Assembly: GCA_002269645.1 (NCBI GenBank)
Contig: NIVC01000217.1
Span: 496,001-560,000, forward strand
Length of the DNA: 64,000 nt
Direction of reading: 5' to 3'
Source of the DNA: Macrostomum lignano
Lineage: Eukaryota
In this document: positions 12,481 through 64,000 of the stretch, in pieces
Layout: every line of letters starts with the position of its first letter
Numbering within the stretch: position 1 is the stretch's first letter
Position numbers and translations under genes: made by a program
The notes under the pieces: generated by a model
What the model was told of the DNA's origin: nothing
What the model saw: only the letters and a program-made list of their open reading frames with translations
Databases searched by the model: none

Positions 12481-12499
12481 TTATAGCTGCATTTAATTT

Positions 12500-15400: not shown

Positions 15401-16767
15401 TTTTTACATGACGCTTCTATGATTGTTTACATGACGCTTCTATGATTGTTTACATGACGCTTCTATGATTGTTTACATGACGCTTCTATGATTTTTTTAC
15501 ATGACGCTTCTATAATTGTTTACATGACGCTTCTATGATTTTTTACATGACGCTTCTATGATTGTTTACATGACGCTTCTATGATTGTTTACATGACGCT
15601 TCTATGATTCTTTACGTGACGCTTCTATGATTTTCACATGACGCTTCTATGATTGTTTACATGACGCTTCCATGATTTTTTAAATGACGCATCTATGATT
15701 TTTATATGACGCTTCTATGATTTTTTTAAATGACGCTTCTATGATTGTTTACATGATGCTTCTATGATTTTTTAAATGACGCATCTATGATTTTTATATG
15801 ATGCTTCTATGATTTTTTAAATGACGCTTCTATGATTGTTTACATGACGCTTCTATGATTGTTTACATGACGCTTCTATGATTCTTTACGTGACGCTTCT
15901 ATGATTTTCACATGACGCTTCTATGATTGTTTACATGACGCTTCCATGATTTTTTAAATGACGCATCTATGATTTTTATATGACGCTTCTATGATTTTTT
16001 AAATGACGCTTCTACGATTTTTTACATGACGCTTCTATGATTGTTTACATGACGCTTCTATGATTGTTTACATGACGCTTCTATGATTTTTTACATGACG
16101 CTTCTATGATTGTTTACATGACGCTTCTATGATTGTTTACATGACGCTTCTATGATTCTTTACGTGACGCTTCTATGATTTTCACATGACGCTTCTATGA
16201 TTGTTTACATGACGCTTCCATGATTTTTTAAATGACGCATCTATGATTTTTATATGATGCTTCTATGATTTTTTAAATGACGCTTCTATGATTGTTTACA
16301 TGATGCTTCTATGGTTTTTTAAATGACGCATCTATGATTTTTATATGATGCTTCTATGATTTTTTAAATGACGCATCTATGATTGTTTACATGATGCTTC
16401 TATGGTTTTTTAAATGACGCATCTATGATTTTTATATGATGCTTCTATGATTTTTTAAATGACGCATCTATGATTTTTATATGACGCTTCTATAATTTTT
16501 TATATGACGCTTCTACGATTTTTTACATGACGCTACTATGATTTTTTTACATGATGCTTCTATGATTGTTTACATGACGCTTCTATGATTGTTTACATGA
16601 CGCTTCTATGATTTTTTCATGACGCTTCTGTGATTGTTTACATGACGCTTCTATGATTGTTTACATGATGCTTTTATGATTGCTTACATGACGCTTCTAT
16701 GATTGTTTACATGACGCTTCTATGATTGTTTACATGACGCTTCTATGATTGCTTACATGACGCTTCT
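12500..16767. repeat. Minisatellite array of a 21-23-bp unit (ACATGACGCTTCTATGATTGTTT), about 4.3 kb
   Basis: Read directly; unit length varies through the T-run; interrupted once at 14119-14237. Confidence 0.99.
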
Positions 16768-16829
16768 TTTTAAAAAGTCTTTTAGTTTTCCTGACGTTGA
16801 AAAGCTTTAATTAAAAAAATTATACTCTA

Positions 16830-16890
16830 TGAAAATTCGAACCATCGTCGCTGCATTTAGCAGTTCAGTCTGTTCACCTCTAGGCTAGTT
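16830..16890 (-). other. tRNA-like Pol III A/B-box sequence bordering the minisatellite (copies also at about 10050-10105 and 14185-14237)
   Basis: Reverse strand tagcctagaggtgaacagactgaactgctaaatgcagcgacgatggttcgaat contains an A-box-like TAGCCTAGAGG and a B-box GGTTCGAAT; no complete acceptor stem. Confidence 0.55.
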
Positions 16891-17139
16891 CTCATCTTTT
16901 TGATAACATCAAATTTTGCACTTATATATATATATAATTCAACAGTTTAAAATCCAAGCATAGAGTAAATCACACGAAGCAGTTATGACATAATCAGTTT
17001 CTCAGTCAGTCAGTATCAGTTAACAATATGGTTACGCAATTTAAATCAAGTCTGGTGCTACGCTTCCACACTGCATTTTCAATTCAAGTCGGAGTTACAA
17101 TTCAGTGATGATGCAATCTATTTCAGAACCAGAATTCAA

Positions 17140-17410
17140 CCAGTCAGTTTTTTCTCTAGCATTCTTACAATGCATTTCAAGTCGAAAAGTTTGCTTGACC
17201 TTTGCAAAAAAGCATGTTTTTCGAATATTTAATGCCTTTAGCATCGAGCAATTTCTTAGCCGCGATGCATGTACAGTCACGGGAAAATTTCTGATCGAAC
17301 AGTGCAAGTTTGAACAAAATCGGTCCAGCCATTTTTTCTCTAATCGATCACATAGATAGATAGATAGATAGATAGATAGACACAGACAGACCATTTTTAG
17401 TATATAGGAT
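17140..17410 (+). mobile_element. Helitron-like non-autonomous element end with (GATA)n
   Basis: aaaatcggtccagcc...gatagatagatagacacagacagaccatttttagtatatagga; related to 11160-11400. Confidence 0.45.
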
Positions 17411-18356
17411 TCAAGAAATGAGCAACAAAATAACAGCATAATATTCAGGAGCAATACTTATAATATTCAGTATCATTAATTAATTATAGCTTAGTAGTAT
17501 TCTCAAGTAGCATATGAGTAGCAGACTAAATTGCAGACTAATTTTAGGTAATTTTTCATATGACCACGAGGCTTTCCTATCCTACGAATTTGACGCCAAA
17601 ACACTAAAGCTGTTAAATGCAAAGATTGGGTCTAAGCCAGATGAAATTTATCAAAGGATATTGTCACTCTTCATCAGCATAAAGCGTTTAGGCAATTTGT
17701 CTGGATAATGCCTAGTATTCATGTCGTGTCGTAGCAATAAGAAGAACTCTTTTCTATTTAAGAGAGCTCTTAGCTGAGCATAGAATACGAGACTGCAACT
17801 GATAGCCAAACCGGCCTTTATATTAACTTGAAAACGACCGACGGCAACATGCCGCCTACATTACGAGTACAGCGCGATCAAAATTTAAGCTTTAGCATAT
17901 AGATAGAAAGATGCAACGTGCTGCGCGTGCACACTAAGTACATTGGTAATGAGTACATTAGATATTAAGTGCGCAGATACGCAAGGCGAGTCAGAGATAG
18001 TTGATGAGCCCCGGCAAGCGGCGCCACAATTCAGAAATACTTCCCGTACTATAATTCACCGGCATTCGTAGACCGAACAGTATCATCCTAACTTAAAGTA
18101 TGGATGCTAAGTGTTGCTAAATGAGGACCATTTATGGTCCGGGAGTGAAAAGTAGCTTTATGTACTCAGGCAGGTAAAGGGCCTATGAACTTAAGCAACA
18201 AATGAATGAAACACTCAACTAGTGACAAGTTTTCAGTGCCAACCACTTCAAATTTGACCCTGGACTACTCCGTTGGAGGTTAAAAGTCCGACTTAACCTC
18301 ATCCGTGGGAACGGACTTCTGTGCGCAGAGCTGTGCTACACCTGATGCAATGCAAC

Positions 18357-25109: not shown

Positions 25110-28100
25110 TTATTCAGATAGGAACTCGTGCTGCCACAGCTCCTGTGCTGAGCTTCTGTCCCTGCGGTCCTTGGCGGTGCAGCGGCTGTAGAAATCCCTC
25201 AGCTCTGCGGACCGGCCATCTGGAAGGGCAGGGGCACCGCTGTTAGCGATTCTCAATGCGACTTGATAGATGCTTTGGTTGCCTCTGAAGGGCCTCGCGC
25301 CGGAGGCCATCTGGAAGACCGAGCAGCCGAACGCCCAGATGTCCGACTCTCTGCTGTACTGCACGCTGTCCGACTCTCCCGCTCCGAGCAGCTCTGGTGC
25401 CATGAAGTTCAGAGTGCCTTTGGGTGACTGAGTGGAGGCTGAGATGTGGCTGACTGACTGCTCCAGCTTGATTGACAAACCAAAGTCGATTAGCTTGATG
25501 GTTATGTTGTCGGCGCAAATGATGATATTGCTGCAGTTTATGTCTCTGTGGATCACGGGTGGCCTCCTATTGTGCATGTAGAGCAGGGCGCTGCAGATCT
25601 GCGAGCGGTCGGTCAGTGAGCAGTCATCATTCATGGGAGCATGGAACAGAAGCATCAAGGATGCACAATGCTCACCTGCTTGCTGAAGTCTCGAATCTTC
25701 AGCTCGTTCAGAGGCCTGTGGTTGATAAACCTCTCTAAGGTTTGGCCGTCCAGCAGCTCCATGAACACAACGACTGTGGCGGGCTCCGGCTGAGCGATGT
25801 GCAAGAACCTGACGATGTTGGGATGCCGCAGTCGGCACAGGTTTCTCTCGCTCTCGATAGCTCTGTGGATCTCCTTGCTCACAGAGTGCAGCTCATCACC
25901 GAGCTGCACAGGCAGTCTGAGAGTCTTGGCAGCGCACGTGACGTCAATGTCAGTGATGACTTCATGGACCTCACCGAAGCCTCCGCGACCAATGAATCGA
26001 ACGACGTCCCAGCGCTCCCGGAATGGTGAGCTGAGTTAGGTTTGTTAAGGATGTTTGAACTGAAGCAACAAGGAACTATTTTCTGATTTTTCTGTGCTCC
26101 CAGCTATTTCTGCCTTAGTTTCCCCTGCGCGAAAATGCATGCACTCACAGAGATTCCTCGAAGAAAATCAAGTCCTTGAACCTGGAATAAACGAAATAAA
26201 TGTAGTAACTTATCTTCGTGTCTACATGTAGTATTTTTTAAACCGCAGCTGGTTCATTCAGGAACTGAACTTGTCAAAGCAAACGTGCTTTGGACGCTAT
26301 ACATATTATATAATAATCAGCAAGATATGAAATCGGCAGTCAAAGTGTACTGCAAACACCCACAATGCATCTCAATCAAAACTACTCATGCATGCACTTT
26401 AAAGTCGGAGTTTCTCCATTCTTCATGGAAACTCACCCAAGCAGCAGATCAGCCAGTTCGGTCTTCTCATTCTGTCTGGCCAAATCCAGCGCAGTCTTGC
26501 CATCTTTGTTCTTCAGTCTCCAATCTGACCCCGAGTCCAGCAGAACCTGGCTGACTGCAGCGGCGGTGGTGAGGGTCGCGGAAGTGGCTGCCTCCATGAG
26601 GGGCGTGGATTCCCAGTGATCTAACGCGTTGGCGGAGGCTCCAGAGTCCAGCAGAGCGGAGGCTGCGGCAGAATTGCCAGCCTTGGCTGCATGGTGCAGG
26701 CAACTGTCAGCCCATCTATCCGCATAGGTGGGGTCACCCAGCTGCATCAAATGTTTCAACAGAGCCCCATCACCGCTGCTCTGAGCTGCTAGCATCAACG
26801 CGGTTTGACACGACAAGTCAGGGAGGTCGCAACTGCCGCGGGTCGCCGCTCTCTGCAGCCCCGCCGAGTCGTCCGCCTTGGCCAGCCGCTGCAGTTCCTG
26901 TCGATCCGCTTCCTCCTGCAAAGGCGAGCGGGAAATTTGAGCACAGCTGCTCAGTTGCAGCCGCATCGGCACTGCAGATGCCGCTCACCTGGTCTGTCAG
27001 GCCGAAGATCATGCCGCTTTTGATAACAAACAGTCGCATCTCCCTGCAACAACAAAACAAACTGTAATTTTTTGCCTTTCAATTTATGACAATTAATCAT
27101 AATTATTTACTACTCATTACCCAATCTGCAAGCATATGAAGATTCTAAGTGGTTTTCAACCTTCCTCTGCCCTGCGCAGGGCCCTGCTTGGACTCAATCG
27201 CAGGGACATCAGGGCGGTGACCATGGCTCTCTCAGGTCATGGCTGTTTTGCCCGGCATCGATACCTCCAGGGAAAAATCCACAGTGAGGAATGCCCTGTC
27301 TGCCTCTCCGATGTCAAGAATGCGGAGCACTTCATCTATGAATGCCCCGCCTTTACTCAGGACAGGCTCACCTACTTCGGCCCAAACCCGGACCTCTCCG
27401 ACGTTTTCAGGCCCAAGAATCTCTGCCAGCTCGTCTGCTACCTAAGGGCTACCGGGCGAGCGACCATCCACCTCCTGGACTCTCCAGAGGGGGACCGCGC
27501 TGCGGACAACGGCACCACCGGAACTCCCTGCGCGACACCGCTGCACTAGCTGCCCGTGGTCGCCAGGGGTTAGTGAAATCGGAGCCCCCTGCTCCGATAA
27601 GTCAAGTAAGTCAAGTGGTTTTCAACAATTAGCATGGCGATAGCGTTTCAGATTTCTCACACGAAGCTTATTAAGCTGTTTCCTTCGAAGCAGCATATAC
27701 TGGCATTCACGCAAAAAAATAAGTAATTTTAGTGATGATTTAACTAATCGACCAGTTTATTGACTGATTCTGGCTTACCCAGCCGAATGCGGCAATATTG
27801 AGACTAAAATTAAACAAAACTGCTCACTCACCGCTCGATGTAGCTGGCCAGCTCTGAGTGGCCGCTGAGCCTTGCCAGATCCGAAGCCGTCCGACCCTCG
27901 CGATCCTTCAGTCCGAGCAGCCGTGACCTCTTCGAGTTTCCGCGCCTACTGCACTCATTGAACCTCATCTGCCTGAGCAGGTGCAGCAGGTGCTTGGCGC
28001 ATTTCCAGCTTCCAGTCCGCGCCGCCTCCATCAGCGGAGTGGTGTCGTTGTCGCTCCGCACCCACTTCGCATCGAACGACATCAGCGTCAGCAGCCGCAG

Positions 28101-30695: not shown

Positions 30696-33025
30696 CCTTA
30701 TGATTACCAGTGGCATGCTGTGCATGCCATCGTTCATTCTGTCAATTGACCATAGACAGATTTGAAGTCGATGGGAAAGCGAGTTTAGACAGAATCATTG
30801 TCTGACTCAACCAAATGGAATGCTATGCATGCCAAGGCCAAAAAACTGTTTGTATTGTCATACTGCGTCGGAGTGTCACAAAACAAATAGAAAACGACAT
30901 ACATTGCATGCACAAAGGTAAATCTTGAGAACATAAGGGCAAATGAAGCTGCATGCAAGTGAATGAAAATAATTTTAGCAACAGTTCGATTACAGTTTCA
31001 GCAAAGCGCCAGCAATCAGTTAGCCGAGTGCCACTCAAAGAAGCACGGCTCCAGGCAAAGCCCAGGCTGACCGTCACAGCCTTGGCAGAAGTAGACGGTC
31101 CGCTTTTTCAGTCTGCGCTGGTAACAAACTCGGCAACGCTTGGTAGGCCGTTCTTGTGCTGCGGTAGCGGGTAGCTTTTCCAGCCGGTGATGAATTTCGC
31201 CTGGCTGACGGGGAAGAGCCTGACGCTTAACTCTCGATCGACCATTTCCGCTGCTTTCAATCAAGTGCTTTACACACCTTTCAGTGTAGCTGAGAAAGCT
31301 CATGGATCCACCTAGATGTCGGTACACAATCCAGGAGTTGCGAACCAGCTGCTGTAGCAGAAACACCGCCAACTTTACGAACCATTTGTGCGTTCGGCGG
31401 CATGCGCTGTAAGGCTGGGCTGCGGCATCCATCCGATCCACACCTCCCATGTTGTGATTATATTGCAAAACCGAGTTGGGCTTCAGCAGCTGCTGCTCCA
31501 CACCACCGCGCAGTACCCGGCTAACCAAAGAGCTAGCAGCCGTTGAAGCGGAGTCCAACAGATAGACCGTCTTTGTTCCTGAGCTTCGCCTGTCAACCAG
31601 CTTCACAGCAAGGATGTCACCATGTCGGGCAAAGGAATGACTCGGTGGTTGCAAGAGCATATCTCGCAGAATCGGTGGAACGCCTCGGTCTTTGCGAACG
31701 GTCCCAGTTAAGGTTGTTCCTCTGGTCAGAAGGAACTTGGCCAGTCGCACCGATGAAAACCAACTGTCGCAAAAGACCCGATATCCAAGGTCCAGAATGT
31801 CGCGACAAAGTTCTACGACGACTCTCTCACTGATTGAGAGCTGCGGCACATCGTTGCCGAACTGTTCATTCGCAATGGTGGTTGAATGTATCAGATAGTT
31901 CCACATGTAGCCTGTAGAAGACTCTGCAAGGCAGTACAATTTGATGCCAAACTTGGCTCTCTTGTTGGGCATGTACTGCTTAAAAATCAGCCTCCCTTTA
32001 TAGAGCAGCAGCGCTTCATCAACGGCAATGCTTTGACCGGGCAGGTAGCTGTTCTTGCAAACTGTCTGGACCATGTCTAGGAACGGCCTGATCTTGCACA
32101 AGGGATCACCAGCGTCGAAGTCAAGACAGTCATAGCAACGCAGCCATGACATGATTTGTTGAAACCGCGAGCGAGGAAGCATCTTCATGCTTTGAAGGTA
32201 GGGATGAAAGTAAAACGGGTCCGTGGACCAGTAAGCCGTCACCTCCGGTTTCTGTACAACTCCGGTATATAATATAACGCCGATCACCTTCTTCATCTCA
32301 GAAACAGTGCAGGGCTTCCACGTTCTGAGCCCGTAAGGCAGTTCATCATCTCCGTGTTCTTGAAACTTGGCAATATCCAGCTGCGCTCTCTTGTTTGTCC
32401 ACATGCACATCTGAAGCAGCAACTCATCGGGTAAAAGTTGCTCGAAAATGGCTGTCCAGCCGTCGTCAACATCAGCAGGTACGGAGAATCCCGGATTGAC
32501 TCCGCTTGCCCCGAGGAACTCGGGAAGGGAATTAGCTCGAGCATCAGTCTCTGGAGTTACTGATCTCCAATCATCGTGCATCATTCCCTGATCGTCTTCC
32601 TCCGATCCATCGTTGCCTTCTTGATTTTCGTCACCGTCCTCTCCCTCGCTCTCGGCAGTGAAAAATGAGTCATCGCTCGACTCATCGCTCGATTCGCTGT
32701 CGAGGCCCAAGTTTCACAAGGCTTGCTTGGCTGCTTGCCGTCGCTGTCTGACCGCTTGCATTGTAGATTTGGTAAGTTGGGGTGGTGAGCTAAGGAGGCA
32801 CCAGTAAAAATTCTTGCAGTTAACTTTTCATGCCTGTATTCCCTCCCTCTTGCCTTTTTTCTAGGTTGGCCATAGACTATTCTCCAGTCAAAGATGTCAC
32901 TTCTCCTGTTGAGAAAGTGTTTTCTTGCCTCTGCATAATAAAGCAACTGTTTTGAAATTCGAAGTGTACAGCGCAGATCTAAATTGTCTATGGCATGCAG
33001 TGCTTGCCATTTGGTAAGATAGAGA
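30696..33025 (-). mobile_element. piggyBac DNA transposon
   Basis: TTAA at 30692-95 followed by TIR ccttatgattaccagtggcatgctgtgcatgccat; degenerate complementary TIR at about 32990-33025; transposase ORF inside. Confidence 0.85.
31016..32761 (-). pseudogene. piggyBac transposase (PGBD4-like), ORF intact except an in-frame TGA at codon 16
   Basis: Catalytic motifs AVDE, FCDSWF and MGGVDRMD; acidic N-terminus; C-terminal Cys-rich domain CRVC...CQGC...LCLEPCFFEWH; ATG at 32761, TGA at 32716-14. Confidence 0.9.
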
Positions 33026-33178: not shown

Positions 33179-34677
33179 CAGGTGATCCAGGAAGGTCTCC
33201 CAGATTACAAACAGAGTTTTCTCTGCACTGGATTGATGGATTGGGCTGAAACTTGACCTGCTCAAACTTTATTCTGAATATGATTTTTGTCTAAAAATCT
33301 TAGCAATTGCTAAAAAAATCACGAAGTTACAGCAGTTTTTCTAAAAAACACCGTTTTCACTTACTGATGAGCACATTTCATTCCAGACTTACACGACTTA
33401 CACGCCAGTTGAAAGATTTAAAATGGCATCCTGGCTGGATGAATTGAAGAGTCCGCTGTTGGTCCAGCGGCGATGGCGTCGTGAGTTCAATTTGGCTGCC
33501 AAACAACGCCCTCCAGATGCTAAGACCATCAAAGATGCACTTAAGGTGGCCTGTGAGTTTGGTTTGGCTCGACGACCAATTTCTGGGCGTCCACGGACTG
33601 CTCGTTCTGCTGAGAATGTGGAACAAGTTGTTCAATACTTCAAGGAGCGACCACAACAGTCAGTACGTCGTGCGAGTCGGGAGCTGAATGTTAGCCATCA
33701 GTCCATCCTTCGTGTGCTGGATAAGAGTGGCTTTCACCCCTATCGCATGCGCCGTCAACAGGCAATGAATGAGGCCGGCCATGAGGCGCGAGTGCTATTC
33801 GCAACTGATATGCTGGAGATGTTTGACAGTGATCCTGAAATGTTAACCAACATCATTTTCTCTGATGAGGCTCATTTCTCCCTGCATGGCCACACTAACA
33901 CCTGGAACTCGCGGTATTGGGCCATTGAAAACCCAGATTTCTCTATCCAGATGCCCCTTCACAGACCACGCGTCTCATGCTGGGCTGGAATTTGGTCCCG
34001 CGGCATTGTTGGACCTTTCTTCTGTGAGGATGCGCAGGGTGCAACTGTTACGTTGGATTCTGAGCGGTACGTGGAAATGCTGGATACAAAGTTTCTGCCT
34101 GTGGTTCAGAATTACGAGGCATTTTTTGCTGGTGACTTGTGGCTGATGCAGGATGGTGCTCCAGCCCACATCGAGCTTAATGTGCGTGAATGGATTCAGC
34201 ACAACTTTGAGGAGCGCGAAATCGGACGCTATGAGACAATTCATTGGCTTGCACCCAGTCCTGATCTCAACCCTAAGGACTTCTTTGTCTGGGGATGGGT
34301 GAAGGACAACGTCTACCGACAGCCAGTGGACAGCCTGGATGAGCTAAGGCACGGAAAACGCAGCTAATGCATGATATGCCAGTGGATTTCGGTGTCAACA
34401 GCCTTAATAGCTTTAAGAAGCGCCTGCAGACTTGTATCGACAACAAAGGTCATCATGTGGAGCACTGACTAACAGTTGCATAGCAGATTGTGCTAAAACC
34501 CTACTGATTTAACAAAAAACTGCTGTAACTTCATGATTTTTTTAGCAATTGCTAAGATTTTTAGACAAGAAATATTTTCAGAATAAAGTTTAAGCAGGTC
34601 AAGTTTCAGCCCAATCCATCAATCCAGTGCAGAGAAAACTCTGCTTCTAGTCCGGGAGACCTTTCTGGACCTCCCTG
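33179..34677 (+). mobile_element. Tc1/mariner DD41D (rosa-like) transposon with a C-terminal frameshift in the transposase (33423-34470)
   Basis: TA TSDs at 33177-78 and 34678-79; TIRs of about 165 bp; FSDEAHF, QDGAPAH and SPDLNPKDFFVWG with 41 residues between D2 and D3; the tail KKRLQTCIDNKGHHVEH is in a shifted frame. Confidence 0.92.
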
Positions 34678-35828
34678 TATTTTGCTAAGCTGAAGTGAGA
34701 TTCTTATCGTGTGATGGGTTGGGTTTCCGGTCCAAAAATATCAATGCGTTCATTCTACCCTCACGTTTGACTATTTAGGTGGCTAGCTGGTAGTGCAGTT
34801 CATACGAGCCATTTATCTGCAACAGCTAGGTAGAGCTAGGGGCAGCAGTGTATACTTTGCACGGATGCATTTGCAAGAGGCCATAAACAAACTTACGAGT
34901 TTAAATGTAAGCTGTTGGTCAAAGCTTCACAGTGTCGCAGACACAAAATTAGTCAACAGCTCTTGAATTTTTAATAATTCACTCTAACGTGCCAAGTAAG
35001 TTTTTACTGCCTGCCTGCTGTGTCTATTTTGTTTTCATTTTAAATAACTAAAACAAGTTTATTTTAAAGAAAAGAGTCTGTTATGATATCCTTAGCAGCA
35101 TTGAAACTCGCCCCTCTATTGTTTAACGCCGTCCACGAGGTTAGAAGATTCGAAAGTTGCTGAATTATTGTTGGCAACAAGCATGAGGAAGATTGCCGGG
35201 AACTCAAGACTTAGCATTTTTGGAAACCAAAAAGTACTTTTGCTCAAAAGTAGCAAAACGAGCACTTTTCGAGTACTTTTTTGTAATTTTCAAATTATTT
35301 GTATTTCAATTTAGGCAGGGGTGCAAGAAAAGCGATATACGAATTACAAAGCTAAAGCTCAAATCGGTACTGAGTTTGATTGCGTTGAGTAATCGATCAC
35401 CAATGACATGTTTGTGCGATGTACTACTGGGGAGCAATGACCCATTCAGAGAAGCACTGTACCCATGGCAGGGGTACTTCCTTTAAATGTTAAAGGTTGC
35501 GCCGACAAAAATACGGGTAGAGTACAGTTTTCAAGATACGGCTTAGCGCGATACACAGAAATCTTTCAGAGGACCCTCTTTCAGTGCGCCAATAAAGGGC
35601 GATGCCATTTGGAATCAAATTTTTATATTCTTGTGAACAAAATTTAATGTTGCATATTTGCTTATTTTACTTTCTTTATAATTTATAGTAGTGTGAAAGA
35701 TTACACTAGGCCTACTATAACAGGTTCGAAGCAGCACATTTCATTTGTTACAATATAATTGTTAGATTTAAATTGTTTTATGCGTTAATTTGTCATTCAG
35801 TTGGTTGTTCAAATGCAAACTATCTCTA

Positions 35829-35901
<73 letters not shown>
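35829..35901. repeat. (CT)n microsatellite
   Basis: Read directly. Confidence 0.97.
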
Positions 35902-35908
<7 letters not shown>

Positions 35909-37291
35909 TCCCCCTCTCTCCTCTCTTTGTCCTTGTCTCTTTCCCTCTCTCTCTTCTTTTTAGTTCGCTTTTAAAGTTATTTTGCGGTCTGTGCATCGGG
36001 AGCTGCGGATAACGGTGGTAGGGGAAATGGGGAGACAAGGAATATGAGGAGACATGGAGATGAAGGCTCAAAAGTAATTTGTGACAAAAAGACATACGCT
36101 CGTAAGTAAAGAAACAGTTTGGGGTATGCTCGTAATTTGACCAAAAAGGGAAATACTAAATTGCGATCATGCCAACCTTTTTTTGCTTTTGTCTTTTTGT
36201 CAAGAATTACCTTTGAGCCTGCTGCAATCGAGTGCTAACGTTATTCAATGTTAAAATGAACATTGTATACCAAAACTCTGTCACAGAAACTCTTGTTTGA
36301 GTTGAGATTTGTCTGAGAGCTCATTCTAACTCTGGTGAGACTGGTATGAATTCAGTTCCCCGTTACACTATTTAGGGTTGCTATCAGGGGTGAGATTTTC
36401 ACTGAATGCTTGAAATGGTCTCTCCTCCTTCCTCCACTTCTGTCCGCCCCTCCTATCCTCGTGCTCTCCCTCCTTCCCTTTCCTCTCTTCCTTCTCCTTT
36501 CTCATTTTAAGGAAGAGACCTGCACCAGTGATTTCGGGGAGGTGAAAAGGCGTCAACTTTTCATTTTATAAAAGCAAAATCTGAAGCAATTGTTCGCACT
36601 TTGCTGCTTCGATCCAACCAAAATACACTACTGTCAAGTTTTACCGCGAATAGTAGCATCTTGTCTTGAAAAGATTGTTTCGATCCCGTAGCCACATTTT
36701 CCCCACTAAGGCTTGAATTACTGGCTCAATTGACGTGGAAAATGATTTACCCCCTTTTAGACCCGCGTAATATGCAGCTTAAACTGGGCACCCGATGATA
36801 TCAGTAGCGAATGAACTCAAGGTCTTACTGGCCGCATCAGCCGCCGCCAAAGAATCCGCTGCCAAGTGCAGCACTGTACTGCTGTTGCTGCTGCTGCTGG
36901 TGGGGTCTTGTAGCCTATGGTTAATTTATCTGGCCGGGCAACGCTTTTGCCCCCATTCTGGAGTGTCTCTTTATTTGTGTGGCTATTTTAAATACACCCG
37001 TTGCAAGCCCTCTCTCCCTTGCTAAGTTTGGCGAAGCAACCACGAAATTATCGTTTACACTTTCAAATTTCCAGCTAAGCCGCCACCGTTCGGCCTGTCT
37101 TAATGAGCGAGGTCACCGACGTGAAAAAAATTATACGCTTAAGACCGTCAAGTAGGTCTTTTTTGAATGATGAATGTAGTTTAAATTCCCATAGAAGAGT
37201 TTTTACCTGTCGAACTTTAAGCTCATTCTTCTGAACTTTACGAAAGGAAGGTTAACACTACCGCACTGTTGTCTTTATTATTGCTTTTCAG

Positions 37292-40200
37292 CTCTTCTTG
37301 AAAGTAGTTCTGCCGATGATTTCAAATTTGAAGATGAACTATGTAAGTTTTACAACCAAGTTTTGCTAAAATTTTTCCTTGCAAACGAACTAAAATACGC
37401 GATGTACAGATTTTACACTGTTGAGACTGGTAGTTTCAAGTAGAATCCTGTAGCTATTTCTGCTTTGCTCAGAGCGGCGACCCTTACTACTAGAGTTATA
37501 GAACTTAACTAAGCTACAATAGCAATGAAAACCCGCTGATCCCTTGTTGAATAACCAACTATGAAAAACCCTCTGCCAAATAATGATATTTAAGGTTCCC
37601 GAAGATTGGCTCTGTTCTTCGACGCTGGCAGTGAGTCAGTGACAGATGAGTACGCCGACTTTCTAAAAGAGTGCAGTTTTAACGTAAAGAGGAGCCTGGA
37701 ACAGCAGTATGAAAGCAAACTGGGCTCGTGTCTATCCGACTTCGTGAACAATTCCGAGGTCCAGCAGCTAATTGTAGTCGTGATAGCTGGCAATGCTTTC
37801 ATGAAGGACGTCCTAGATTTCATGACAATGGGTACATTTCCCAACTGCCAAAACAGATGTTTATTATTTTGTCGCGCTGGTGAAGAAAGCCCGGATGACA
37901 CGAAACTTGCAAACGAATTTTCGAATGCGAATTTTAAATACAAGTGTACAACTATCGCTTACGTCGTGGCTAAGGAAACTAAAAGCGTACAGGGCTTCTA
38001 TAGAAGCTTTCTGGATGACTGCAGGTGCAGTTGGGAGACTAAAAGTATATTTTCTATCCTGGAGACGGCATTGAAGCTACCACTCGCTTACGAGTCCCTT
38101 TCTCTGTATCATAGAGAAGGAAAGCTCGGTGGAGATTTCCTGCGCGACATTTTCAAATTTATCAGGGAACCCAAGAGCAACCTTGATGAAGTTGATGCCT
38201 TACCAGCAGCATCAGAGCAGGCTGCTCAAGACAAACCGACTGATTGGATGCGCGAGAATGCCTCAATAATCTATCCGAATCGGCGCAATCCGAAAAAGCC
38301 TCGAGCGTTGGTCATCATCAACTATGACCGAGGAGACTCTCTATACTCTGCTCTGCAAGTTGACCGCAGCAGAGTTATGCGTATGCTAAAAAATCTTGGC
38401 TACATTGTAACGGACGTGCAAACCCGCTCCAATGACGCCTTGAAAAGAAGGATCGAGCTTTTTTCAGAAGATACTGAACACGGTGACTCCTGCATCCTTG
38501 TCGTGCTGTCCCAGACGCAGCAGCAGCTGAGCAGCTCTACTGTCATGAATTTGTACAAAAGCTTGGCTATTGGCGAAAAGCTCGAGGCCAAGCCCCGACT
38601 CTTTATTCTGCACGAGTGGGATGTCACAACACTGCAGACAGACTCTGTTACTGATGGTTTCAGCAGCAATACTTATGAGATCATTGAAGATGCTGTGGAC
38701 GGTTTGCAGGCCTATTTTCGCAAGCATGATTCAACCATCAAGGTTCATCCACACAGCGGCATGGTGTTCGGTCGATCAGTTAGTAGCGATGTGACAAGAG
38801 CAGAGGGCAGCGCTTTTATTCAGACACTGTGCGAAACTTTCAGACAGTATGGGCACACAGAGGACGTGGCCTCTATGATTACCATAATTAATGAGCACAA
38901 ACGACTAGATGAATCTGTGCCCAAGTGGTTTATTCAGACTGGCAAGCTCTTTTATATCATGGGAACAGACGGAATCCAGGGTAAGAGCACTTTTTTTAGC
39001 TCAATGCATGTATACTTTTCAATTCGAACTTTGCCAAAAGTGACTTCAACTTCGGCAACACGATAAATTATGACTGTCACTGTTACTGTCAAAGTGACTT
39101 AAAATTCTTTGTGATCAATATCATTGTAGTTCTGTAGCTCAGACTGCTTGTGCCACCGCCAACATTTTTTGGTGTTAGGGCGCGACACTGGTGGTGTAAA
39201 TTTTGACCTAACGGTTCCTTCTAGTTGCCTTTAAACAATACAATCTTGAATGACAAATCTGTGATTGACTGCTTTGGCCGTGTTTACATTTATGTCGAGG
39301 TACTTCACTAGTCGTCTTCAGTCTCTCCTTGTTGTTGTCAAAATTGTTCACTTTTGCCAAAGTCGAAATTGAAAAGTTACAACTATGCAGAAATCATTAT
39401 TGCATAATCATTTGCACTATTTTGCTTTTAGCTACCGGTCAGGAGGTTTCGCAACAAAGTCTACAGAAGAAATCTAAAGAACCTAAACAAAGTCTAGAGA
39501 AGAAATCTAAAGAACCTAAAAGCGCCAGAATTGGTAAGTGGCATATTAAATTATCGAGAAACACCTCTTACGACGTAGAGATCCGATTCATGCGTTATAG
39601 CCATATAAAGCTATGTGCAACATCTTTGCAAGACTACTCACTTCTAATTATACTGGTATCTGTTCCGTTTTTTTCTGCGATGTCCAAACATTTTTATCCT
39701 ATGAAGAATTATTTCATCTAAAAACCTTCTGATAAGTACATGTATTTCAGAAAGATACGCTTGAGTTATAAACATTATTAGATTCATGTATTAAAGAACA
39801 ACTTTGCTTGCATGAGTCAATAAAACTCGATAATCTCAGCAAAGCTCAGCCGTACTTGCACTTTTTAATTTCAGATCGAACAGGGTTTGTGATGATTCTC
39901 ACCGAAGGACAGTTTGATGGGGCCAGAAACTATCAGATGTTTCTGGAGTATGCAGCCTTCAAAGTGCTCTTCGATTACACGGATGGCAATTCGAGCTCAA
40001 TCAAGACAGCCATCAGGCTTCCAAAAGAAACTGAAGGAAATGTTGTCCTTTATCTAATTGTACGCACGCATCGCAACGACAACGTCTTGCAAGAAATATT
40101 CGATGAACTTTCTAAACAGCAATCGTCTCAAAAGTGCAGCAGTAGCATTTTGCTTATTCTTTGCGAAGTGTCCGAGTCTGAAGAGAATTTCGCGAACACT

Positions 40201-41337
40201 CAGATGCCAGAGGAGCTACCCGAGAAGTTCAGCGTTGTCAGAGTTTGCAGGAATCGGTGCGGCGTGATTGAATTTCTGGACTCCCTGCTGGAATCTCCCA
40301 GGAAGAACATCTCTCTCAATGGCAGCTTTGTGGTTGGTAGAGATTTTTCCTGCCATTCCTGCCATCACGGCATAATGCACTGCAAAGTCAATGATGAAAA
40401 CCCAGGCTGGAGGAAGAGAATCACTTGGCTTGAAAACTTTTATATAGAAGAGAGTTCATCGCACCCAAATCTGACTTCAATTGACGTTAGTGACGACACG
40501 CAGACGAGACCAGCAATAAGAGGTTCTCTCCGATTAGAGACTTTCAGAAGCGAATGGAATGCACCTGGATTAGACACTCAAGAGTGCAAGGCTGTAGCCC
40601 TCATCGTTCACAACGTTGTCTTTCAGAAAAAGGAACTATCTACTCGGTTCGGAAGTCAGTACGACTGCCAGCGAATGGCTGACACTTTGCTCAGGCTTGG
40701 CTACTCAGTGAGCATCAGGTCGAATCTCACCAAAGTAGAAATCGAAAGCGAATTAGACATGTTTTGCAGTGACGCACGACACGGCAGCTCAGTCGTAGTT
40801 GCTTTTATGTCTCACGGATGTCTCGGTGAAGTAGTTGGTTTCGACGGCGAATCAGCAAAGGAAAGTAAAATTCTAAAGAGAATTTCCAAAGGAAAACGCA
40901 CAAGTAGAAAGCAGCAATTGGTTATCTTTGAGAACTGTCGAGACCCTGGTCGATGGCCTAAATCAGAGCTGGCGTTCTTTCCTGACATGATCGTCGCTCA
41001 CTCGACTTCGCCGGATGAAAGCAGCTACCGAATGACAGACAGAGGCAGTCGGTTCATCCAGTGTCTGTGCACTGTTCTCGACCTGTTCGCCGACAAGTGC
41101 GACATTGCATCAATGGTTCCTATCGTTAATTATGTGGTGCAAAACGCCACTTTTAATCTGGGCATCAGCCAGCTGCCCTGGTGGTCTGTGCAGACAAGCA
41201 AGAAATTTTGGATTCGAGTCAATGAGCCTCCTCAAAGCAGTCGTGAATCGCGCCAACAAGCCAATTCAGCTAGGAACCAAACAACGAATGACTGCAGGGT
41301 TCAGGTGACGGAACTTCTTCAAAAAATGCGGTTGTAA
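37292..41337 (+). CDS. Multi-caspase-fold protein (peptidase C14 family), exons 37292-37342, 37595-38980, 39432-39533, 39875-41337; start exon upstream not found
   Basis: Three GT-AG introns, all phase 1 (t|gtaagt..taag|gt; g|gtaag..ttttag|ct; g|gtaagt..tttcag|at), give an open frame of about 1000 codons. Caspase motifs occur in both large exons. Confidence 0.72.
37595..38980 (+). CDS. Exon encoding a degenerate caspase fold plus a catalytically dead caspase domain
   Basis: PRALVIINY...LKNLGY.V...CILVVLSQ (His absent)...KPRLFILHEWD (QACRG replaced)...GSAFIQTLCE. Confidence 0.85.
39875..41337 (+). CDS. Exon encoding a degenerate caspase fold plus a putatively active caspase domain
   Basis: VALIVHN, STRFGSQYD, VAFMSHG (His codon 40813-15), IFENCRD (Cys codon 40936-38), MIVAHSTSP and SYR...GSRFIQCLC. 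Confidence 0.9.
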
Positions 41338-41976: not shown

Positions 41977-43093
41977 GTAATAAATTACTACGTAGTATAA
42001 TAACATAATTATTACAAAAGGAGCGTGTTTTCATTAGTGCCTCGATGGAACAAATTTAGTTTTTATTGTTTAATGAAAGACGATATACAGTGACTGTTCT
42101 AAACAGTTTAAGCCAGTCTAAGTTAAAAACAGCAGCAGAATTGCTCTCGCTATAACTAACCGTTGCCGAATTTTTGATTGAGAAAAACGTTATCCTAGTG
42201 TATGTTTTCATTATTAAAACTCATTATAAATGAATACAAAGTTTTCCTGATTTTTAATGTTTTATTGAAAGAAGTTAAAGAAATACTTCTAACATTGGAG
42301 TACGAGTAAATGTTATAGTTGTATTTAATGTAATCGATCTTTTGAATTTGAATGTATCAAAATCGCAAACTGCGACTGGCCCTCGATTGTAGTGCATCAC
42401 TGAATTATATTTTTCTCTTACTCTGATTCATTTATTTATAGTAAACATAAAACTAACAGGCTCGTAAATTGCTGATTCCTAATTCAATTGTTTATTTAAA
42501 TATGAACGATTATCTAATCAAGTACAACAACTCAATTCAAATAAATCAAAGGAAACTAAGAGTTTTCCGCTTGTCACCGAATGTCTGCTTTTTTATTTTG
42601 ACCAACGTTTAGTATAACTTAGCTAGTTAATATATAGGTGTATCTACAAGTGTATAGGAGTACGAGTGCATATAGTAGTATAGAAGTATATATACACAGT
42701 TACTAGCTTAGCTAGCTTAGAATTAGTTTTACATTACAAAATAGCTTTATTGTATATATTAACTTTCCATCCAAAAATCCAAATTTCCCCTTTTCAGATT
42801 AATTACACAAAAAATTCTTATATAACCAAACCTTATCTGGTATTCGAAGAAACGATCGAACTCAGTATCGATGGCTGATTTTCCTGACACATTTGAGACC
42901 GAAAGCCCAGCAACTAGTAAGTGCGAACCTACAATAAAAATATTAGCAAATAAATTCGAACAAACATAGGCTGATTGATTCCTCTGAGTAATTATTCCCA
43001 CATTTAAATTTTCAGTATTGCACGAACTTTCAACAGTTTCAGGTCTGTTAGATGTTTAAAACAAAATTTATTACTAATTTAAAATCATTCTCC

Positions 43094-61571: not shown

Positions 61572-64000
61572 TTAGTTCGTCAAAAGTTGTCTGCAGATAA
61601 GCAAGATTAGTAAGCCGATCCACGTGCATCCGCCTGTTGAGCGCAGGGTCTGGGAAGGGCTGCCATAGTGACCGAGTCGATCGCCTAAAAATATAAAAAT
61701 TTAAACTGTCATTTATATTTTGTTTTTTTTTGTTTTAATAGTATAGCACTCTCTGAATTTAGCCTTCATTGAACTATATCGTCGACTATTTTATTCAATT
61801 TCTGCTGAAACTTTGGAGAAAGCACGAATGACGAAGTGACGAATGACGATGACGAAGCACGAATTGTGACGTCTGCACTCACTGGAGAGCCTGTCAAAGT
61901 AGTAAACACCGAGAAAGCCCGGAGAATTGTATCGATCGTTGCTGACAAACACTACTCGAACACAGGTGGCTTGGAACTTGTACACAAAGGCTTTGCCCCT
62001 CTCCGGACGGCCGCAAAGCACGTTCTGACTGCTGGCCAGACCGATCGGCCGCGAGCAGTCATCGGCTGTCACAAAGTCACTCTCATCCGGGATACACCTG
62101 CAGTAAAACAAATCAGAAAGCATTTTCAGGTTGGTTATTTAACAGCAAAGCTCTCCCTGGATCTTAAATATGCCAGTTAATGTTAGTTTTTAATTAACAG
62201 TGCTTTTGATTAATAAGATTTAAACAAGAATCGCAATCAGCAGGTTGCCAGCAGTATCTAGTCTTTTTGGAGCAAACCGGATAAATTTAAATAATTCATT
62301 GAATCCGAAATTCGATCACTTTGAGCTCTATGGTATCTTTGTTTACGAGGTACAGTTAATCAAAGCTGATATTTTTCACCTAACGCCTTAGTTTTAATTT
62401 ATATATTGTTGATGAAGTTCCATACCGATAAAAAGTACTTACGCTCTTCGAGATGTCTCCGTGTCAAAGTTAGTAAACTCAATTCGCGTAATCTCGTGTG
62501 GCCTAGCTCGAAATATGTAAGTGCAGGTGAGCTGCTCAGGGTAGGCGTAAGGATAGTTGGGGCTTGAGAAATTTCCGCTGGACGCCCGGTTGCTATGAAA
62601 CTCAAAGTGGCAGCCGAGAGACTGGTTCTGCATCTTGTGCTCGCCCAGTATACCAAAATCTGCAGAGTCAAAATCGATTAGCTTCGATAAGATTCTTGAA
62701 TTTTCTATTTATTCAATGTCGGAAGAAGATAAATTCAGGCCTCGCTAAAATCCTACCTTGCACGAAGCTGTACTTGAACCTGAGACCCCGTCGAACTTTT
62801 GAAGCTTTCTCTGTGTAAAAGCTGAGTTTCAGCTTGGGAATCCGGGTGCTCATGATTCGCACCGGCCTAGAGCTTCTAACCTCGCAGAACGGCTTGTCAA
62901 CAGCGTCTACCTTGCCGCCAGACATTTGCATCTCGATGTACTTCGTAATGGTCACCTGATCCTTGGAGGTGCACTCGAGTGCCGTGCTAATATCTGTGGT
63001 TCTTGACTCCACGTCCAGCTCTTGAATTTCTAAAACCACTCTCTCTGTTTTGTTGGCTCTGCCCAGAAAAGTCCAGGAGCAGTGCAACTGCTGGTACCCG
63101 TCCGGGTAGTTGGGCGAATGCAGCACCCCGCTTGAGGTCTCATCGCTGCGAATCTCCCTGTTGGCTGAGCAGCCCAGCGTGACCTGCTTGCTGTCCGTCG
63201 CAACCATGCCCTGGTCCTTGGGCGTGTCCAACTCATGTTTGTCGACCCGCTCCGTGAAATAATAGTTGCCATTGAAGCCTCTCTCGCCGAGGGTCAGCCG
63301 GTCATCGGTGTGGAACACCAGAGTCAGGTGCGGCCCGGTAGAATAGACGGATTCGCTGTATTGTGTGCCGCAAAACACTGCGTTTGGGTTGCCAAGTGCA
63401 CTGCTGCTGTAGTACACCAGGACCCTATCGCCCTGGTCTGAGCTGCAACTGCAATAACATTCTATCGATGCAATGTACGTGTATATTAGATGCCTAGAAA
63501 TAGCTCAATAATGTCTCCCAACCTTCCAGTGACGGGCCCGTCCAGTCTGAAGTCAATGAACCGAATGTGGGCCATCTCGCCTGGTCTGCCGATGAACCGA
63601 TATGTAAACTTGGCCAGTCTTGGATATCCCTTCGACTCAGAGTAGTTAACGCTGCTGAACACTCCTTGTTTGCTTTGACTGCTTCGGAACTCGATAGTGT
63701 GCTCAATAACTTTGTTTGGCAAGATTCCTGCGAGATTAGTGTCACGTTACAAGGTGGTACGTTACAAGGTGATTCATGATAATGGGACTATCTGTAGTAA
63801 AACCTAGCCAAAATTTCACTCACCGTTTGCGCTGAGCACGTCCCTGTCCAGCGGTCTGGTGGCCTGCAGTTTGTGCCTGGCAACAAAGCCATATCGAGCT
63901 GAGAAACCCTGACCAATGACAGAGTCTGCATTCGAGACAAATTTCACTCTGAAGTAGGCTTCTTGACTAACTGTTTGCACTTTGGAATCGAATCTGCAAT
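61572..64000 (-). CDS. Multi-CUB-domain extracellular protein, 3' part (exons >64000-63824, 63727-63523, 63448-62757, 62659-62443, 62097-61883, 61684-61572), probable GPI-anchor tail
   Basis: All introns GT-AG with matching phases (1,2,1,2,1); CUB motifs SPNYP..Y....CTYIF, FCG, VF.SN....GF..YY; the last exon ends TWIGLLILLICRQLLTN*. Confidence 0.82.

What the first reader, a model, noticed from the sequence alone, without database searches (positions are those of the whole stretch)
37595..40460. The prodomains are cryptic caspase folds rather than CARD/DED domains
Seen: the N-terminal part of exon 37595 reads RRLALFFD / YADFLKECSFNV / QLIVVVIAG / FMKDVLDF / RCLLFCRAG / TTIAYVV...GFYRSFLD. The N-terminal part of exon 39875 reads GFVMILTE / YQMFLEYAAFKV / VLYLIVRTH / LQEIFDEL / ILLILCE / FSVVRV...GVIEFLDSL. 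Established: this order matches the caspase elements ALIIN / LxxxFxxLGFxV / CFVCVILSHG / PKLFIIQACRG / DFLIAYST / GSWFIQSL. Inference: a two-fold unit arose first and was then duplicated. The second cryptic fold keeps a His and a Cys near dyad positions and might not be fully inert.
Basis: partly seen in the sequence, partly recalled or inferred. Interest (0 to 1): 0.75.

Follow-up and report, generated by a model that had tools for sequence, protein, structure and literature searches.

The report
Flatworm caspase with hidden caspase-like domains
A flatworm (Macrostomum lignano) caspase gene encodes four caspase-type domains in one chain, and the two that look like unknown "prodomains" are very probably worn-down copies of the caspase fold itself, a rare arrangement seen before only in a few animals such as mammalian caspase-16.

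Summary
The quoted motifs are all present. They lie in a five-exon, 1016-aa Macrostomum lignano gene with the layout N1–C1–linker–N2–C2. C1 is a recognisable caspase domain that has lost its catalytic His and Cys. C2 is a recognisable caspase domain that keeps both.

N1 and N2 have no Pfam or PDB sequence hit, but they are homologous to each other (hhalign P=7e-8). The AlphaFold model of N2 (pLDDT 70, pTM 0.75) matches only caspases among its 14 best PDB hits (E 9e-5 to 1.4e-3, TM 0.45–0.59). The N1 model is weaker (best hit a caspase, E=0.026). None of 240 block-permuted controls reached that score.

TIR (a UniRef name on partial gene models) and death folds are not supported.

The "two-fold unit, then duplication" history fits: each N–C unit is one phase-1 exon, also in a paralogue.

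N2's His and Cys are not conserved among paralogues, and the substrate-binding loops are missing, so N2 is probably inert.

This is a new variant of a known kind (caspase-16, coral caspase-X). All evidence is computational.

The parts
37103..37151 (+). Exon 1, with the start codon (MSEVTDVKKIIRLRPS). The donor is GT and the exon ends in phase 1.
   Evidence: Matches the N-terminus of M. lignano protein P0002. The spliced CDS of 3051 nt is in frame.
37292..37342 (+). Exon 2 (TLLESSSADDFKFEDEL), AG/GT, phase 1.
37595..38196 (+). N1 (residues 34-233): the first cryptic, degenerate caspase-like domain. The predicted core from b1 to a4 lies at about 37603-38037. No His at the dyad column. The Cys of 'LLFCRAG' is retained.
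   Evidence: No Pfam or PDB sequence hit. AF2 pLDDT 60.7, pTM 0.64, alpha/beta. Best Foldseek hit is drICE, E=0.026, with caspases mixed among CheY-like folds. Homologous to N2 at P=7.2e-8. N1 profile against caspase domains gives P=1.8e-3.
38197..38980 (+). C1 (residues 234-495): recognisable pseudo-caspase domain. The Pfam match is at about 38302-38892. The catalytic His is replaced (LSQTQ) and the catalytic Cys is replaced (LHEWD). The exon ends at a GT donor, phase 1.
   Evidence: Peptidase_C14 E=4e-12. C1 vs C2: BLASTP E=3e-9 and hhalign 8.6e-20. The loss of the dyad is shared by paralogues P0004 and P0005.
39432..39533 (+). Exon 4: Lys-rich linker mini-exon containing a 33-nt tandem duplication (QSLQKKSKEPK / QSLEKKSKEPK). 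Phase 1 on both sides.
   Evidence: Absent from paralogue P0005, whose two unit exons are separated by one short intron.
39875..40452 (+). N2 (residues 529-722): the second cryptic caspase-like domain.
   Evidence: AF2 pLDDT 69.7, pTM 0.75. The Foldseek top 14 are all caspases (drICE 9.2e-5, CED-3, caspase-3/6/7/8), with cFLIP and MALT1 lower in the list. TMq is 0.45-0.59 for the top caspases against 0.36 or less for non-caspases. hhalign to caspase domains P=2.6e-4 to 3e-4.
40069..40071 (+). Codon of His595 in N2 (VRTH). It aligns with the catalytic His of the caspase 'SHG' motif.
   Evidence: hhalign alignments. Not strictly conserved: the column is H, H, R in the three N2 paralogues.
40162..40164 (+). 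Codon of Cys626 in N2 (LLILCEV). It falls 0-2 residues from the catalytic Cys column, depending on where the gap is placed.
   Evidence: Cys in 6 of 7 N sequences, Phe in P0005 N2.
40453..41337 (+). C2 (residues 723-1016) plus the stop codon: the only catalytically competent caspase domain. The Pfam match is at about 40591-41208. His843 (SHG) is at 40813-40815 and Cys884 (ENCRD) at 40936-40938.
   Evidence: Peptidase_C14 E=3.2e-31. Best PDB sequence relative is caspase-3, E=5e-14. His843, Cys884, Arg787 and Arg915 are invariant in the three paralogues.

Best explanation
The window carries a Macrostomum lignano gene (exons 37103-37151, 37292-37342, 37595-38980, 39432-39533, 39875-41337) for a 1016-aa protein with four caspase-type domains: N1-C1-linker-N2-C2.

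Shown here:
- C1 is a recognisable caspase domain without the catalytic dyad, and C2 is one with the dyad.
- N1 and N2 are homologous to each other.
- The N2 model resembles solved caspases more than any other fold in the PDB.
- The N profile aligns weakly but in full register with caspase domains.

Inferred history: an ancestral caspase domain was duplicated in tandem. The N-terminal copy degenerated into a trimmed pseudo-protease, with the L1 and L3 substrate loops shortened, the dyad decaying and the p10-like end unrecognisable. The resulting N-C unit, held in a single phase-1 exon, was then duplicated, and the first unit lost its remaining active site.

Inferred mechanism (about 35% likely; not tested): caspase domains become active only when paired with a second caspase fold. 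The cryptic and pseudo-caspase domains would therefore act as built-in partners or scaffolds for the single catalytic centre in C2, as cFLIP(L) does for caspase-8 and as proposed for the caspase-16 prodomain. They would replace adaptor-driven CARD/DED recruitment. The N domains themselves are most likely catalytically inert.
For: Gene model and identity:
- Spliced CDS in frame, all introns GT-AG and phase 1.
- 97% identical to the 1016-aa UniRef protein A0A1I8J0J1.

Domain calls: Pfam C14 on C1 and C2 only.

N1-N2 homology: hhalign P=4.6e-5, then 7.2e-8 with more sequences.

Fold:
- N2 AF2 pTM 0.75.
- The Foldseek top 14 are all caspases, E 9.2e-5 to 1.4e-3, probability 1.00, TMq 0.45-0.59, against 0.36 or less for non-caspases.
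- N1's best hit is drICE, and many caspases are in its top 50.

Sequence:
- N profile against the family's own C domains: P=3e-4 and 2.6e-4 over 75-122 columns, covering a1-b2-a2-b3(His=His)-a3-b4(Cys)-b5-a4.
- 0 of 240 block-permuted N profiles reach the real score (mean 16.8, sd 3.3, max 30.1, real 34.4). The reversed control scores 14.
- N against five human caspases: P=0.02, aligning b1-a1-b2 in register.

Constraint: among paralogues N2 is 32-40% identical, like C1 (34-40%) and far above the linker (9-23%).

Architecture: the four-domain layout and one unit per exon are conserved in paralogue P0005. N1 is also present upstream of the truncated P0004 gene model.
Against: - No standard sequence method (Pfam hmmscan at E<=10, phmmer or hmmsearch against PDB) sees a caspase in N1 or N2.
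- The models are of middling confidence (pLDDT 61-70) and come from a 5-sequence alignment. TM-scores are only about 0.5.
- The N1 model matches generic flavodoxin-like folds about as well as caspases, and no hit has E<=1e-3.
- The hhalign P-values are modest, and they fall to 0.02-0.05 against human caspases alone.
- The C-terminal third of N shows no similarity to the p10 part.
- Strand b6 is modelled with low confidence.
- UniRef names two partial models of paralogue P0005 'TIR domain-containing protein'. This probably means a PROSITE TIR profile hit, which I could not reproduce or locate.
- The mechanism is pure inference: no inter-domain model, no expression data and no activity data.
Confidence: 0.68

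Rival explanations
1. N1 and N2 are divergent TIR domains. The protein would then be a TIR-pseudocaspase-TIR-caspase fusion that couples TIR-type signalling or oligomerisation directly to a caspase.
For: UniRef names two partial models of paralogue P0005 (P0007 = A0A1I8GM93, P0016 = A0A1I8IZE5) 'TIR domain-containing protein'. Both contain N1, C1 and the start of N2. TIR and caspase share the b-a-b-a-b 2-1-3-4-5 core. N1 is modelled with a 9-residue helix between b4 and b5, where TIR would have helix aD.
Against: - No Pfam TIR, TIR_2 or related model matches any of 5 N sequences at E<=10.
- The N profile against a profile of 5 Pfam-verified TIR domains gives P=0.16-0.27, with only 10-25 columns aligned and out of register.
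- No TIR chain appears among the top 50 Foldseek matches of either model, although the PDB holds many.
- TIR box motifs are not visible.
Confidence: 0.1
2. N1 and N2 are a lineage-specific flavodoxin-like or Rossmann-like alpha/beta domain that does not derive from a caspase. The caspase matches would then reflect the common three-layer sandwich topology plus modelling bias.
For: - The top hits for N1 include methylmalonyl-CoA mutase B12 domain, type II dehydroquinase, CheY-like receivers and designed Rossmann folds, at the same E-values as caspases.
- TM-scores are about 0.5 or less.
- Small-profile hhalign of N against C was not significant (P 0.1-0.3).
- The p10-like part shows no similarity.
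Against: - For N2, caspases are clearly separated from every other fold: 14 of the top 14 hits, and TMq 0.45-0.59 against 0.36 or less.
- Larger profiles give P about 3e-4. The alignment places the His, the Cys, b5 and a4 where caspases have them.
- 0 of 240 permutations reach the real score.
- The domain always sits directly in front of a caspase domain, in a gene family that demonstrably duplicates caspase modules.
Confidence: 0.17
3. N2 is a second, still active protease centre that uses His595 and Cys626.
For: In the hhalign alignments His595 aligns with the catalytic His, and Cys626 lies 0-2 residues from the catalytic Cys. The Cys is kept in 6 of 7 N sequences.
Against: - The Cys is Phe in P0005 N2, and the His column is Arg in P0004 N2.
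- The roughly 10-13 residue L1 segment carrying the S1 arginine is a gap in N.
- The L3 loop between b5 and a4 is cut from about 13 residues to about 4-6.
- N1 lacks the His altogether.
Confidence: 0.04

Closest known systems
Mammalian caspase-16 (CASP16), Eckhart et al. 2025, PMC12198278
   Same: The N-terminal 'prodomain' is predicted to fold like a caspase domain. It arose by duplication of the exons that encode the caspase domain. The catalytic site is lost in the N-terminal copy and kept in the C-terminal one. An intramolecular pseudo-dimer like cFLIP/caspase-8 is proposed.
   Different: Caspase-16 has one duplication, giving two domains, and its internal similarity is visible at sequence level. 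Here there are four domains. The two cryptic ones are beyond Pfam detection and are trimmed to about 150-190 aa. The whole pseudo+caspase unit was duplicated again. The origin is independent, in a flatworm.
Acropora millepora caspase-X (Xa-Xd), PMC4715348, and Mytilus coruscus caspases with two CASc domains, PMC10967218
   Same: Invertebrate caspases with two caspase domains in one chain. In caspase-X the first lacks the catalytic His and Cys. This corresponds to the C1...C2 relationship here.
   Different: In those proteins both domains are recognisable by standard domain searches. No additional cryptic caspase-fold domains in front of each one have been reported.
cFLIP(L) / caspase-8 heterodimer
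   Same: A catalytically dead caspase fold pairs with, and regulates, a live one. The cFLIP(L) protease-like domain (3h13) and the caspase-8:cFLIP complex (3h11_B) are among the structural matches of N2.
   Different: cFLIP is a separate polypeptide recruited through DED domains. Here the dead folds are fused in cis, and no death-fold domain is present.
Other clan CD proteases with an inactive alpha/beta subdomain next to the active one (gingipain R subdomains A and B, as described in PMC4626109). From my own knowledge: the separase pseudo-protease domain and the Raptor N-terminal caspase-like domain.
   Same: A caspase-hemoglobinase fold that has lost catalysis is reused as a structural partner or scaffold (for gingipain).
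   Different: These are different families with no detectable sequence relationship. None of them appeared in the Foldseek top 50.

Membership tests
Caspase fold (clan CD, family C14) - applied to N2 | Three-dimensional similarity to solved caspase domains that exceeds similarity to other alpha/beta folds. | tested here: met
   On the AF2 model (pLDDT 69.7, pTM 0.75), the Foldseek top 14 hits are all caspases, E 9.2e-5 to 1.4e-3, TMq 0.45-0.59. The best non-caspase has TMq 0.36 or less. This rests on a predicted model, not a solved one.
Caspase fold (clan CD, family C14) - applied to N1 | Three-dimensional similarity to solved caspase domains that exceeds similarity to other alpha/beta folds. 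| tested here: inconclusive
   Model pLDDT 60.7. The best hit is drICE at E=0.026. Caspases are interleaved with CheY-like, dehydroquinase and B12-domain folds, and no hit has E<=1e-3. The assignment rests on homology to N2 (P=7.2e-8).
Caspase fold (clan CD, family C14) - applied to N1 and N2 | Match to the family's sequence model (Pfam PF00656 Peptidase_C14). | tested here: not met
   No hit at E<=10 for any of 5 N sequences. No PDB caspase by phmmer or hmmsearch.
Caspase fold (clan CD, family C14) - applied to N1 and N2 | Profile-profile similarity to bona fide caspase domains, with secondary-structure elements in the caspase order. | tested here: met
   hhalign P=3e-4 and 2.6e-4 over 75-122 columns, a1 through a4 in register. 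0 of 240 block permutations reach the score. Against human caspases only, P=0.02-0.05. This is weak but specific.
Active caspase - applied to N1 and N2 | A conserved His-Cys catalytic dyad, the S1 arginines, and an intact L3 substrate loop. | tested here: not met
   N1 has no His. N2's His and Cys are not conserved among paralogues. The L1 Arg segment is absent and the L3 loop is shortened.
Caspase fold - applied to N1 and N2 | A sixth, antiparallel strand (b6) forming the dimer interface. | tested here: inconclusive
   The N2 model has a strand at local residues 168-173, but it lies in a region with pLDDT around 50-64. A conserved 'P-x-W ... aromatic' tail resembles the caspase C-terminus by eye only. 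hhalign on the C-terminal part is not significant.
TIR domain - applied to N1 and N2 | Match to TIR sequence models (Pfam TIR or TIR_2; PROSITE PS50104). | tested here: not met
   Pfam: no hit at E<=10. hhalign against a profile of five Pfam-verified TIR domains gives P=0.11-0.27, with short out-of-register alignments. PROSITE could not be run here. The UniRef names of P0007 and P0016 suggest a PROSITE hit somewhere in those partial models.
TIR domain - applied to N1 and N2 | Structural similarity to solved TIR domains. | tested here: not met
   No TIR chain appears in the top 50 Foldseek matches of either model.
Death-fold prodomains (CARD, DED, DD, PYD) | An all-alpha six-helix bundle, and a Pfam death-fold match. 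| tested here: not met
   Both models alternate strands and helices. There is no death-fold Pfam hit at E<=10.
Caspase (C14A) - applied to C2 | Pfam C14 match plus catalytic His (SHG), Cys (QACxG-like) and the S1 arginines. | tested here: met
   E=3.2e-31. His843, Cys884, Arg787 and Arg915 are invariant in the three paralogues. The motif here is ENCRD (Q to E), whereas the 90% copy P0001 has QNCRD. Activity was not tested.
Pseudo-caspase - applied to C1 | Caspase domain by sequence, with the catalytic dyad replaced. | tested here: met
   Peptidase_C14 E=4e-12. His is replaced by Q/E/L-type residues and Cys by W/Y in all three paralogues.

The most novel reading that the evidence does not exclude
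The protein would be a self-contained, single-chain 'dimer of pseudo-dimers'. Four caspase folds (three dead, one live) would pack intramolecularly so that C2 is activated or held in check without any CARD/DED adaptor platform. That would be a new initiator logic, evolved in a flatworm lineage reported to lack FADD (PMC11463336). The cryptic N domains would be the regulatory partners.
Probability: 0.2. Interest if true: 0.65.

Novelty: new variant of a known kind. Interest (0 to 1): 0.45.

Why it matters
Caspase activation is normally explained by adaptor-driven dimerisation through death-fold prodomains. Proteins that carry their own dead caspase partner in cis are rare natural experiments on that rule, and the caspase-16 paper of 2025 called its caspase-like prodomain unique among known caspases (PMC12198278).

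This flatworm family would be an independent and more extreme case. It has two rounds of duplication and domains degraded beyond routine annotation. It sits in a tractable regeneration model in which RNAi is routine.

It also shows that 'unknown prodomains' of invertebrate caspases may be hidden caspase folds. That matters for surveys that classify caspases by prodomain. A recent lophotrochozoan survey that included M. lignano reported only a kinase-like unusual prodomain there (PMC11463336).

Tried and rejected
- Pairwise BLASTP of N1 vs N2 and of N vs C found nothing.
- Pfam on N1 and N2 gave only noise (PSY3, Gin, E>0.04).
- phmmer and profile hmmsearch of N against PDB sequences gave 0 hits at E<=10.
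- The word-indexed homologue searches returned only near-identical M. lignano fragments.
- The exhaustive HMMER search with N2 found only M. lignano paralogues plus one spurious repeat protein, P0006. No deep alignment could therefore be built.
- hhalign of N vs C with 2-3 sequence profiles was not significant. It became so only after merging N1+N2 and C1+C2.
- The p10-like C-terminal part of N shows no profile similarity to caspases.
- Selection tests were uninformative:
  - The L001/L002 copies are about 99% identical in the exons.
  - The 90% copy in L003 has frameshifting indels in N1, C1 and N2, so its dN/dS values of 0.44-0.74 are hard to read.
- The death-fold reading is rejected, because the models are alpha/beta.
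- The TIR reading was considered seriously because of the UniRef names, and was rejected on three independent negative tests.
- Neither N model was searched against the 'viral' fold library, which I judged not relevant here.
Full report
**What is there.** The window is eukaryotic DNA from the flatworm Macrostomum lignano. The only database relatives of the region are M. lignano proteins. A 4.6-kb stretch is 98% identical to contigs of assembly GCA_002269645.1.

The finding lies in one plus-strand gene of five exons: 37103-37151, 37292-37342, 37595-38980, 39432-39533 and 39875-41337. All introns are GT-AG and phase 1. The gene gives a 1016-aa protein that is 97% identical to UniRef A0A1I8J0J1, named 'CASPASE_P20 domain-containing protein'.

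Exon 3 and exon 5 each encode about 200 aa with no recognisable family (N1, N2), followed by a Pfam Peptidase_C14 domain (C1, E=4e-12; C2, E=3e-31). C1 has lost the catalytic residues (LSQTQ in place of SHG, LHEWD in place of QACRG). C2 keeps them (SHG; ENCRD), and also keeps the two S1 arginines.

**Observation check.** The N1/N2 resemblance is not detectable by BLASTP. Profile-profile comparison gives P=4.6e-5.

The score rises to P=7.2e-8 (probability 94.6%, 136 columns in register) after I added two N1 sequences read from paralogous loci. One of them, upstream of the truncated P0004 gene model, begins 'RLALILTENRF'. That bridges N1 to the 'GVALI(L/F)TE' start of N2.

**Relatives.** An exhaustive HMMER search with N2 against 1.84 billion representative proteins found only M. 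lignano paralogues:
- P0005 (PAA75222, 1017 aa, 33% identical) has the same N1-C1-N2-C2 layout.
- P0004 (PAA73902, 838 aa, 41% identical) is a gene model that starts inside N1. The rest of its N1 lies just upstream in the genome.

Among the paralogues N2 is 32-40% identical. That is as conserved as the pseudo-caspase C1 (34-40%) and far more than the linker (9-23%). N1 is 27% identical. The N regions are therefore constrained protein domains, and the four-domain layout predates the paralogue split. In P0005 each N-C unit is again one exon.

**Which fold?** AlphaFold2 models were built from a five-sequence alignment of N domains only, with no caspase sequence and no templates. Both are alpha/beta: b-a-b-a-b-a-b-(short a)-b-a. 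N2 has pLDDT 69.7 and pTM 0.75. N1 has pLDDT 60.7 and pTM 0.64. This excludes a death fold.

For N2, Foldseek against the PDB returns caspases as the 14 best matches: drICE 3sir_A at E=9.2e-5, then CED-3 and caspases-3, -6, -7 and -8. The cFLIP(L) protease-like domain and MALT1 come a little lower. Probability is 1.00 and query TM is 0.45-0.59. The best non-caspase folds have TM 0.36 or less.

For N1 the best hit is also drICE, but only at E=0.026. Caspases (caspase-1, -2, -3, -4, -11, CED-3, MALT1) are interleaved with CheY-like, dehydroquinase and B12-domain folds. No TIR domain appears in either top 50.

**Independent sequence evidence.** With merged profiles (N1+N2 against C1+C2), hhalign gives P=3e-4 (75 columns). 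With the enlarged sets it gives P=2.6e-4 (122 columns).
- YQMFLEYAAFKV aligns with LLRLGYSV (a1-b2).
- VVLYLIVRTH aligns with VVVAFMSHG, His on His.
- ILLILCE aligns with LVIFENC (b4).
- TTIAY / FSVVRV aligns with DMIVAHS (b5).
- GVIEFLDSL / GFYRSFLD aligns with GSRFIQCL (a4).

Strand b1 aligns in register in a separate run against five human caspases, P=0.02.

As a control I shuffled the order of the 13 secondary-structure blocks of the N alignment 240 times. None reached the real score of 34.4 (mean 16.8, sd 3.3, max 30.1). The reversed profile scored 14.

Against a profile of five Pfam-verified TIR domains, N gives P=0.16-0.27, with 10-25 columns aligned out of register.

The similarity is confined to the p20-like part plus b5 and a4. 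The last ~50-60 residues of N show none.

**The TIR lead.** UniRef names two partial models of paralogue P0005 'TIR domain-containing protein'. Such names usually follow a PROSITE profile hit (my own knowledge). I could not run PROSITE. Pfam TIR models, the TIR profile comparison and the fold search are all negative. I therefore keep TIR as a rival at about 10%.

**Catalytic relics.** In the alignments His595 of N2 sits on the catalytic His. Cys626 sits on the catalytic Cys or two residues before it, depending on gap placement. The Cys is kept in 6 of 7 N sequences, so it may well be a relic of the nucleophile.

Several features nevertheless argue against activity:
- The Cys is Phe in P0005 N2.
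- The His column is Arg in P0004 N2, and N1 has no His.
- The L1 segment with the S1 arginine is a gap.
- The L3 loop between b5 and a4 is cut to a few residues.

The N domains are therefore best read as inert pseudo-protease folds.

**History.** N1 groups with N2, and C1 with C2 (8.6e-20). Cross-comparisons are far weaker. First a caspase domain was duplicated in tandem. The upstream copy then decayed. The two-fold unit was then duplicated, and the first unit lost its dyad. Gene-level duplications followed.

The paralogues sit in tandem. In contig NIVC01000896 the window-type gene is followed 1.7 kb downstream by the P0005 gene. Contig NIVC01000988 shows a similar pair.

**How it probably works (inference).** Caspase domains need a partner caspase fold to order their active-site loops. 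The cFLIP(L)/caspase-8 pair shows that a dead partner is sufficient, and the same idea has been put forward for caspase-16 (PMC12198278).

I therefore propose that N2, and perhaps C1 and N1, are cis-acting partners or scaffolds for the single active site in C2 (His843/Cys884). They would take the place of CARD/DED-mediated recruitment. An invariant Asp736-Asp737 between N2 and C2 could be a processing site.

None of this was tested. I put it at about 35%.

**Comparison and novelty.** Tandem caspase domains with an inactive first copy are known in coral caspase-X (PMC4715348) and in mussels (PMC10967218). A prodomain that is a cryptic caspase-like fold is known from mammalian caspase-16, where it was described as unique among caspases (PMC12198278).

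The flatworm protein differs in three ways. It has four folds. Two of them have decayed beyond Pfam detection. It shows two nested rounds of duplication. The gene models are already public, but the N domains are unannotated. A survey of lophotrochozoan caspases that included M. lignano did not report them (PMC11463336).

I rate this a new variant of a known kind, of moderate interest. The main caveats are that all fold evidence rests on medium-confidence predictions from a shallow alignment, and that N1 is assigned mostly through N2.

Noticed in passing
window 42718-42976 (first exon about 42868-42912): In contig NIVC01000896 the paralogue P0005 gene starts 1.7 kb downstream of the window-type gene. 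The window keeps only its first exon ('MADFPDTFETESPAT'). Similarity to that contig stops at about 42976, and no further P0005-like exon is found up to 64000. This looks like an insertion or rearrangement that removed or displaced the neighbouring paralogue in this haplotype or copy.
   Followed up: partly
window 31016-32710 (-) and 33423-34367 (+): Two transposase ORFs lie just upstream of the caspase gene. One is a 564-aa piggyBac-type transposase (DDE_Tnp_1_7, E=6e-69, plus the zf-Tnp_2 zinc finger). The other is a 314-aa Tc1/mariner-like ORF with weak HTH_Tnp_Tc3_2 and DDE_3 matches, both below Pfam's cut-offs.
   Followed up: partly
window 39453-39520: The linker mini-exon contains a 33-nt unit present 2.1 times at 97% identity (QSLQKKSKEPK / QSLEKKSKEPK). 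This exon is absent from paralogue P0005, so the linker is evolving quickly.
   Followed up: partly
window 40345-40383: A His/Cys-rich stretch 'FSCHSCHHGIMHC' sits at the low-confidence end of N2. It is not present in paralogues P0004 or P0005. It may be a lineage-specific metal-binding insert.
   Followed up: no
window 40930-40938: The active-site pentapeptide of C2 reads ENCRD, with Glu where caspases have the conserved Gln of QACxG. The roughly 90% identical copy (P0001) has QNCRD, and the paralogues have QACR and QCCR. The effect on activity is unknown.
   Followed up: no
L003 4467-9197 (contig NIVC01000896): The roughly 90% identical copy of the whole gene has frameshifting indels in N1, C1 and N2, and only its C2 part is annotated (P0001, 318 aa). 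This is either pseudogenisation of the upstream domains or long-read indel errors.
   Followed up: partly
L004 12809-15192 (contig NIVC01000988): A fourth, P0005-like paralogue lies downstream of the P0004 gene. Its N1 is intact, its C1 is broken by frameshifts, N2 is apparently missing, and a C2-like caspase is annotated as a 325-aa protein.
   Followed up: partly
P0003 and P0009 (UniRef A0A1I8GN.., A0A1I8GY..): These are public transcript-derived models of this gene with in-frame internal deletions that join C1 to mid-N2, and N2 to mid-C2. They may be alternative or cryptic splicing, or assembly artefacts. At the least they suggest the locus is transcribed.
   Followed up: no
window 35823-35954: A (TC)n microsatellite of about 67 copies, with further CT-rich short repeats at 36023-36063 and 36464-36502, lies upstream of the gene.
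   Followed up: no
window 25110-25838 (-), 26433-26972 (-), 62713-63417 (-): Other coding pieces in the window: the C-terminal half of a protein kinase domain (E=1e-33), ankyrin repeats about 600 bp away on the same strand (possibly one ankyrin-kinase gene), and a CUB domain exon.
   Followed up: no
window 8001-10000 and 12001-18000: There is strong negative GC skew (-0.58) at 8-10 kb. An AT-rich block (GC 0.32-0.34) with strong negative AT skew lies at 12-16 kb. These are probably simple or satellite repeats.
   Followed up: no
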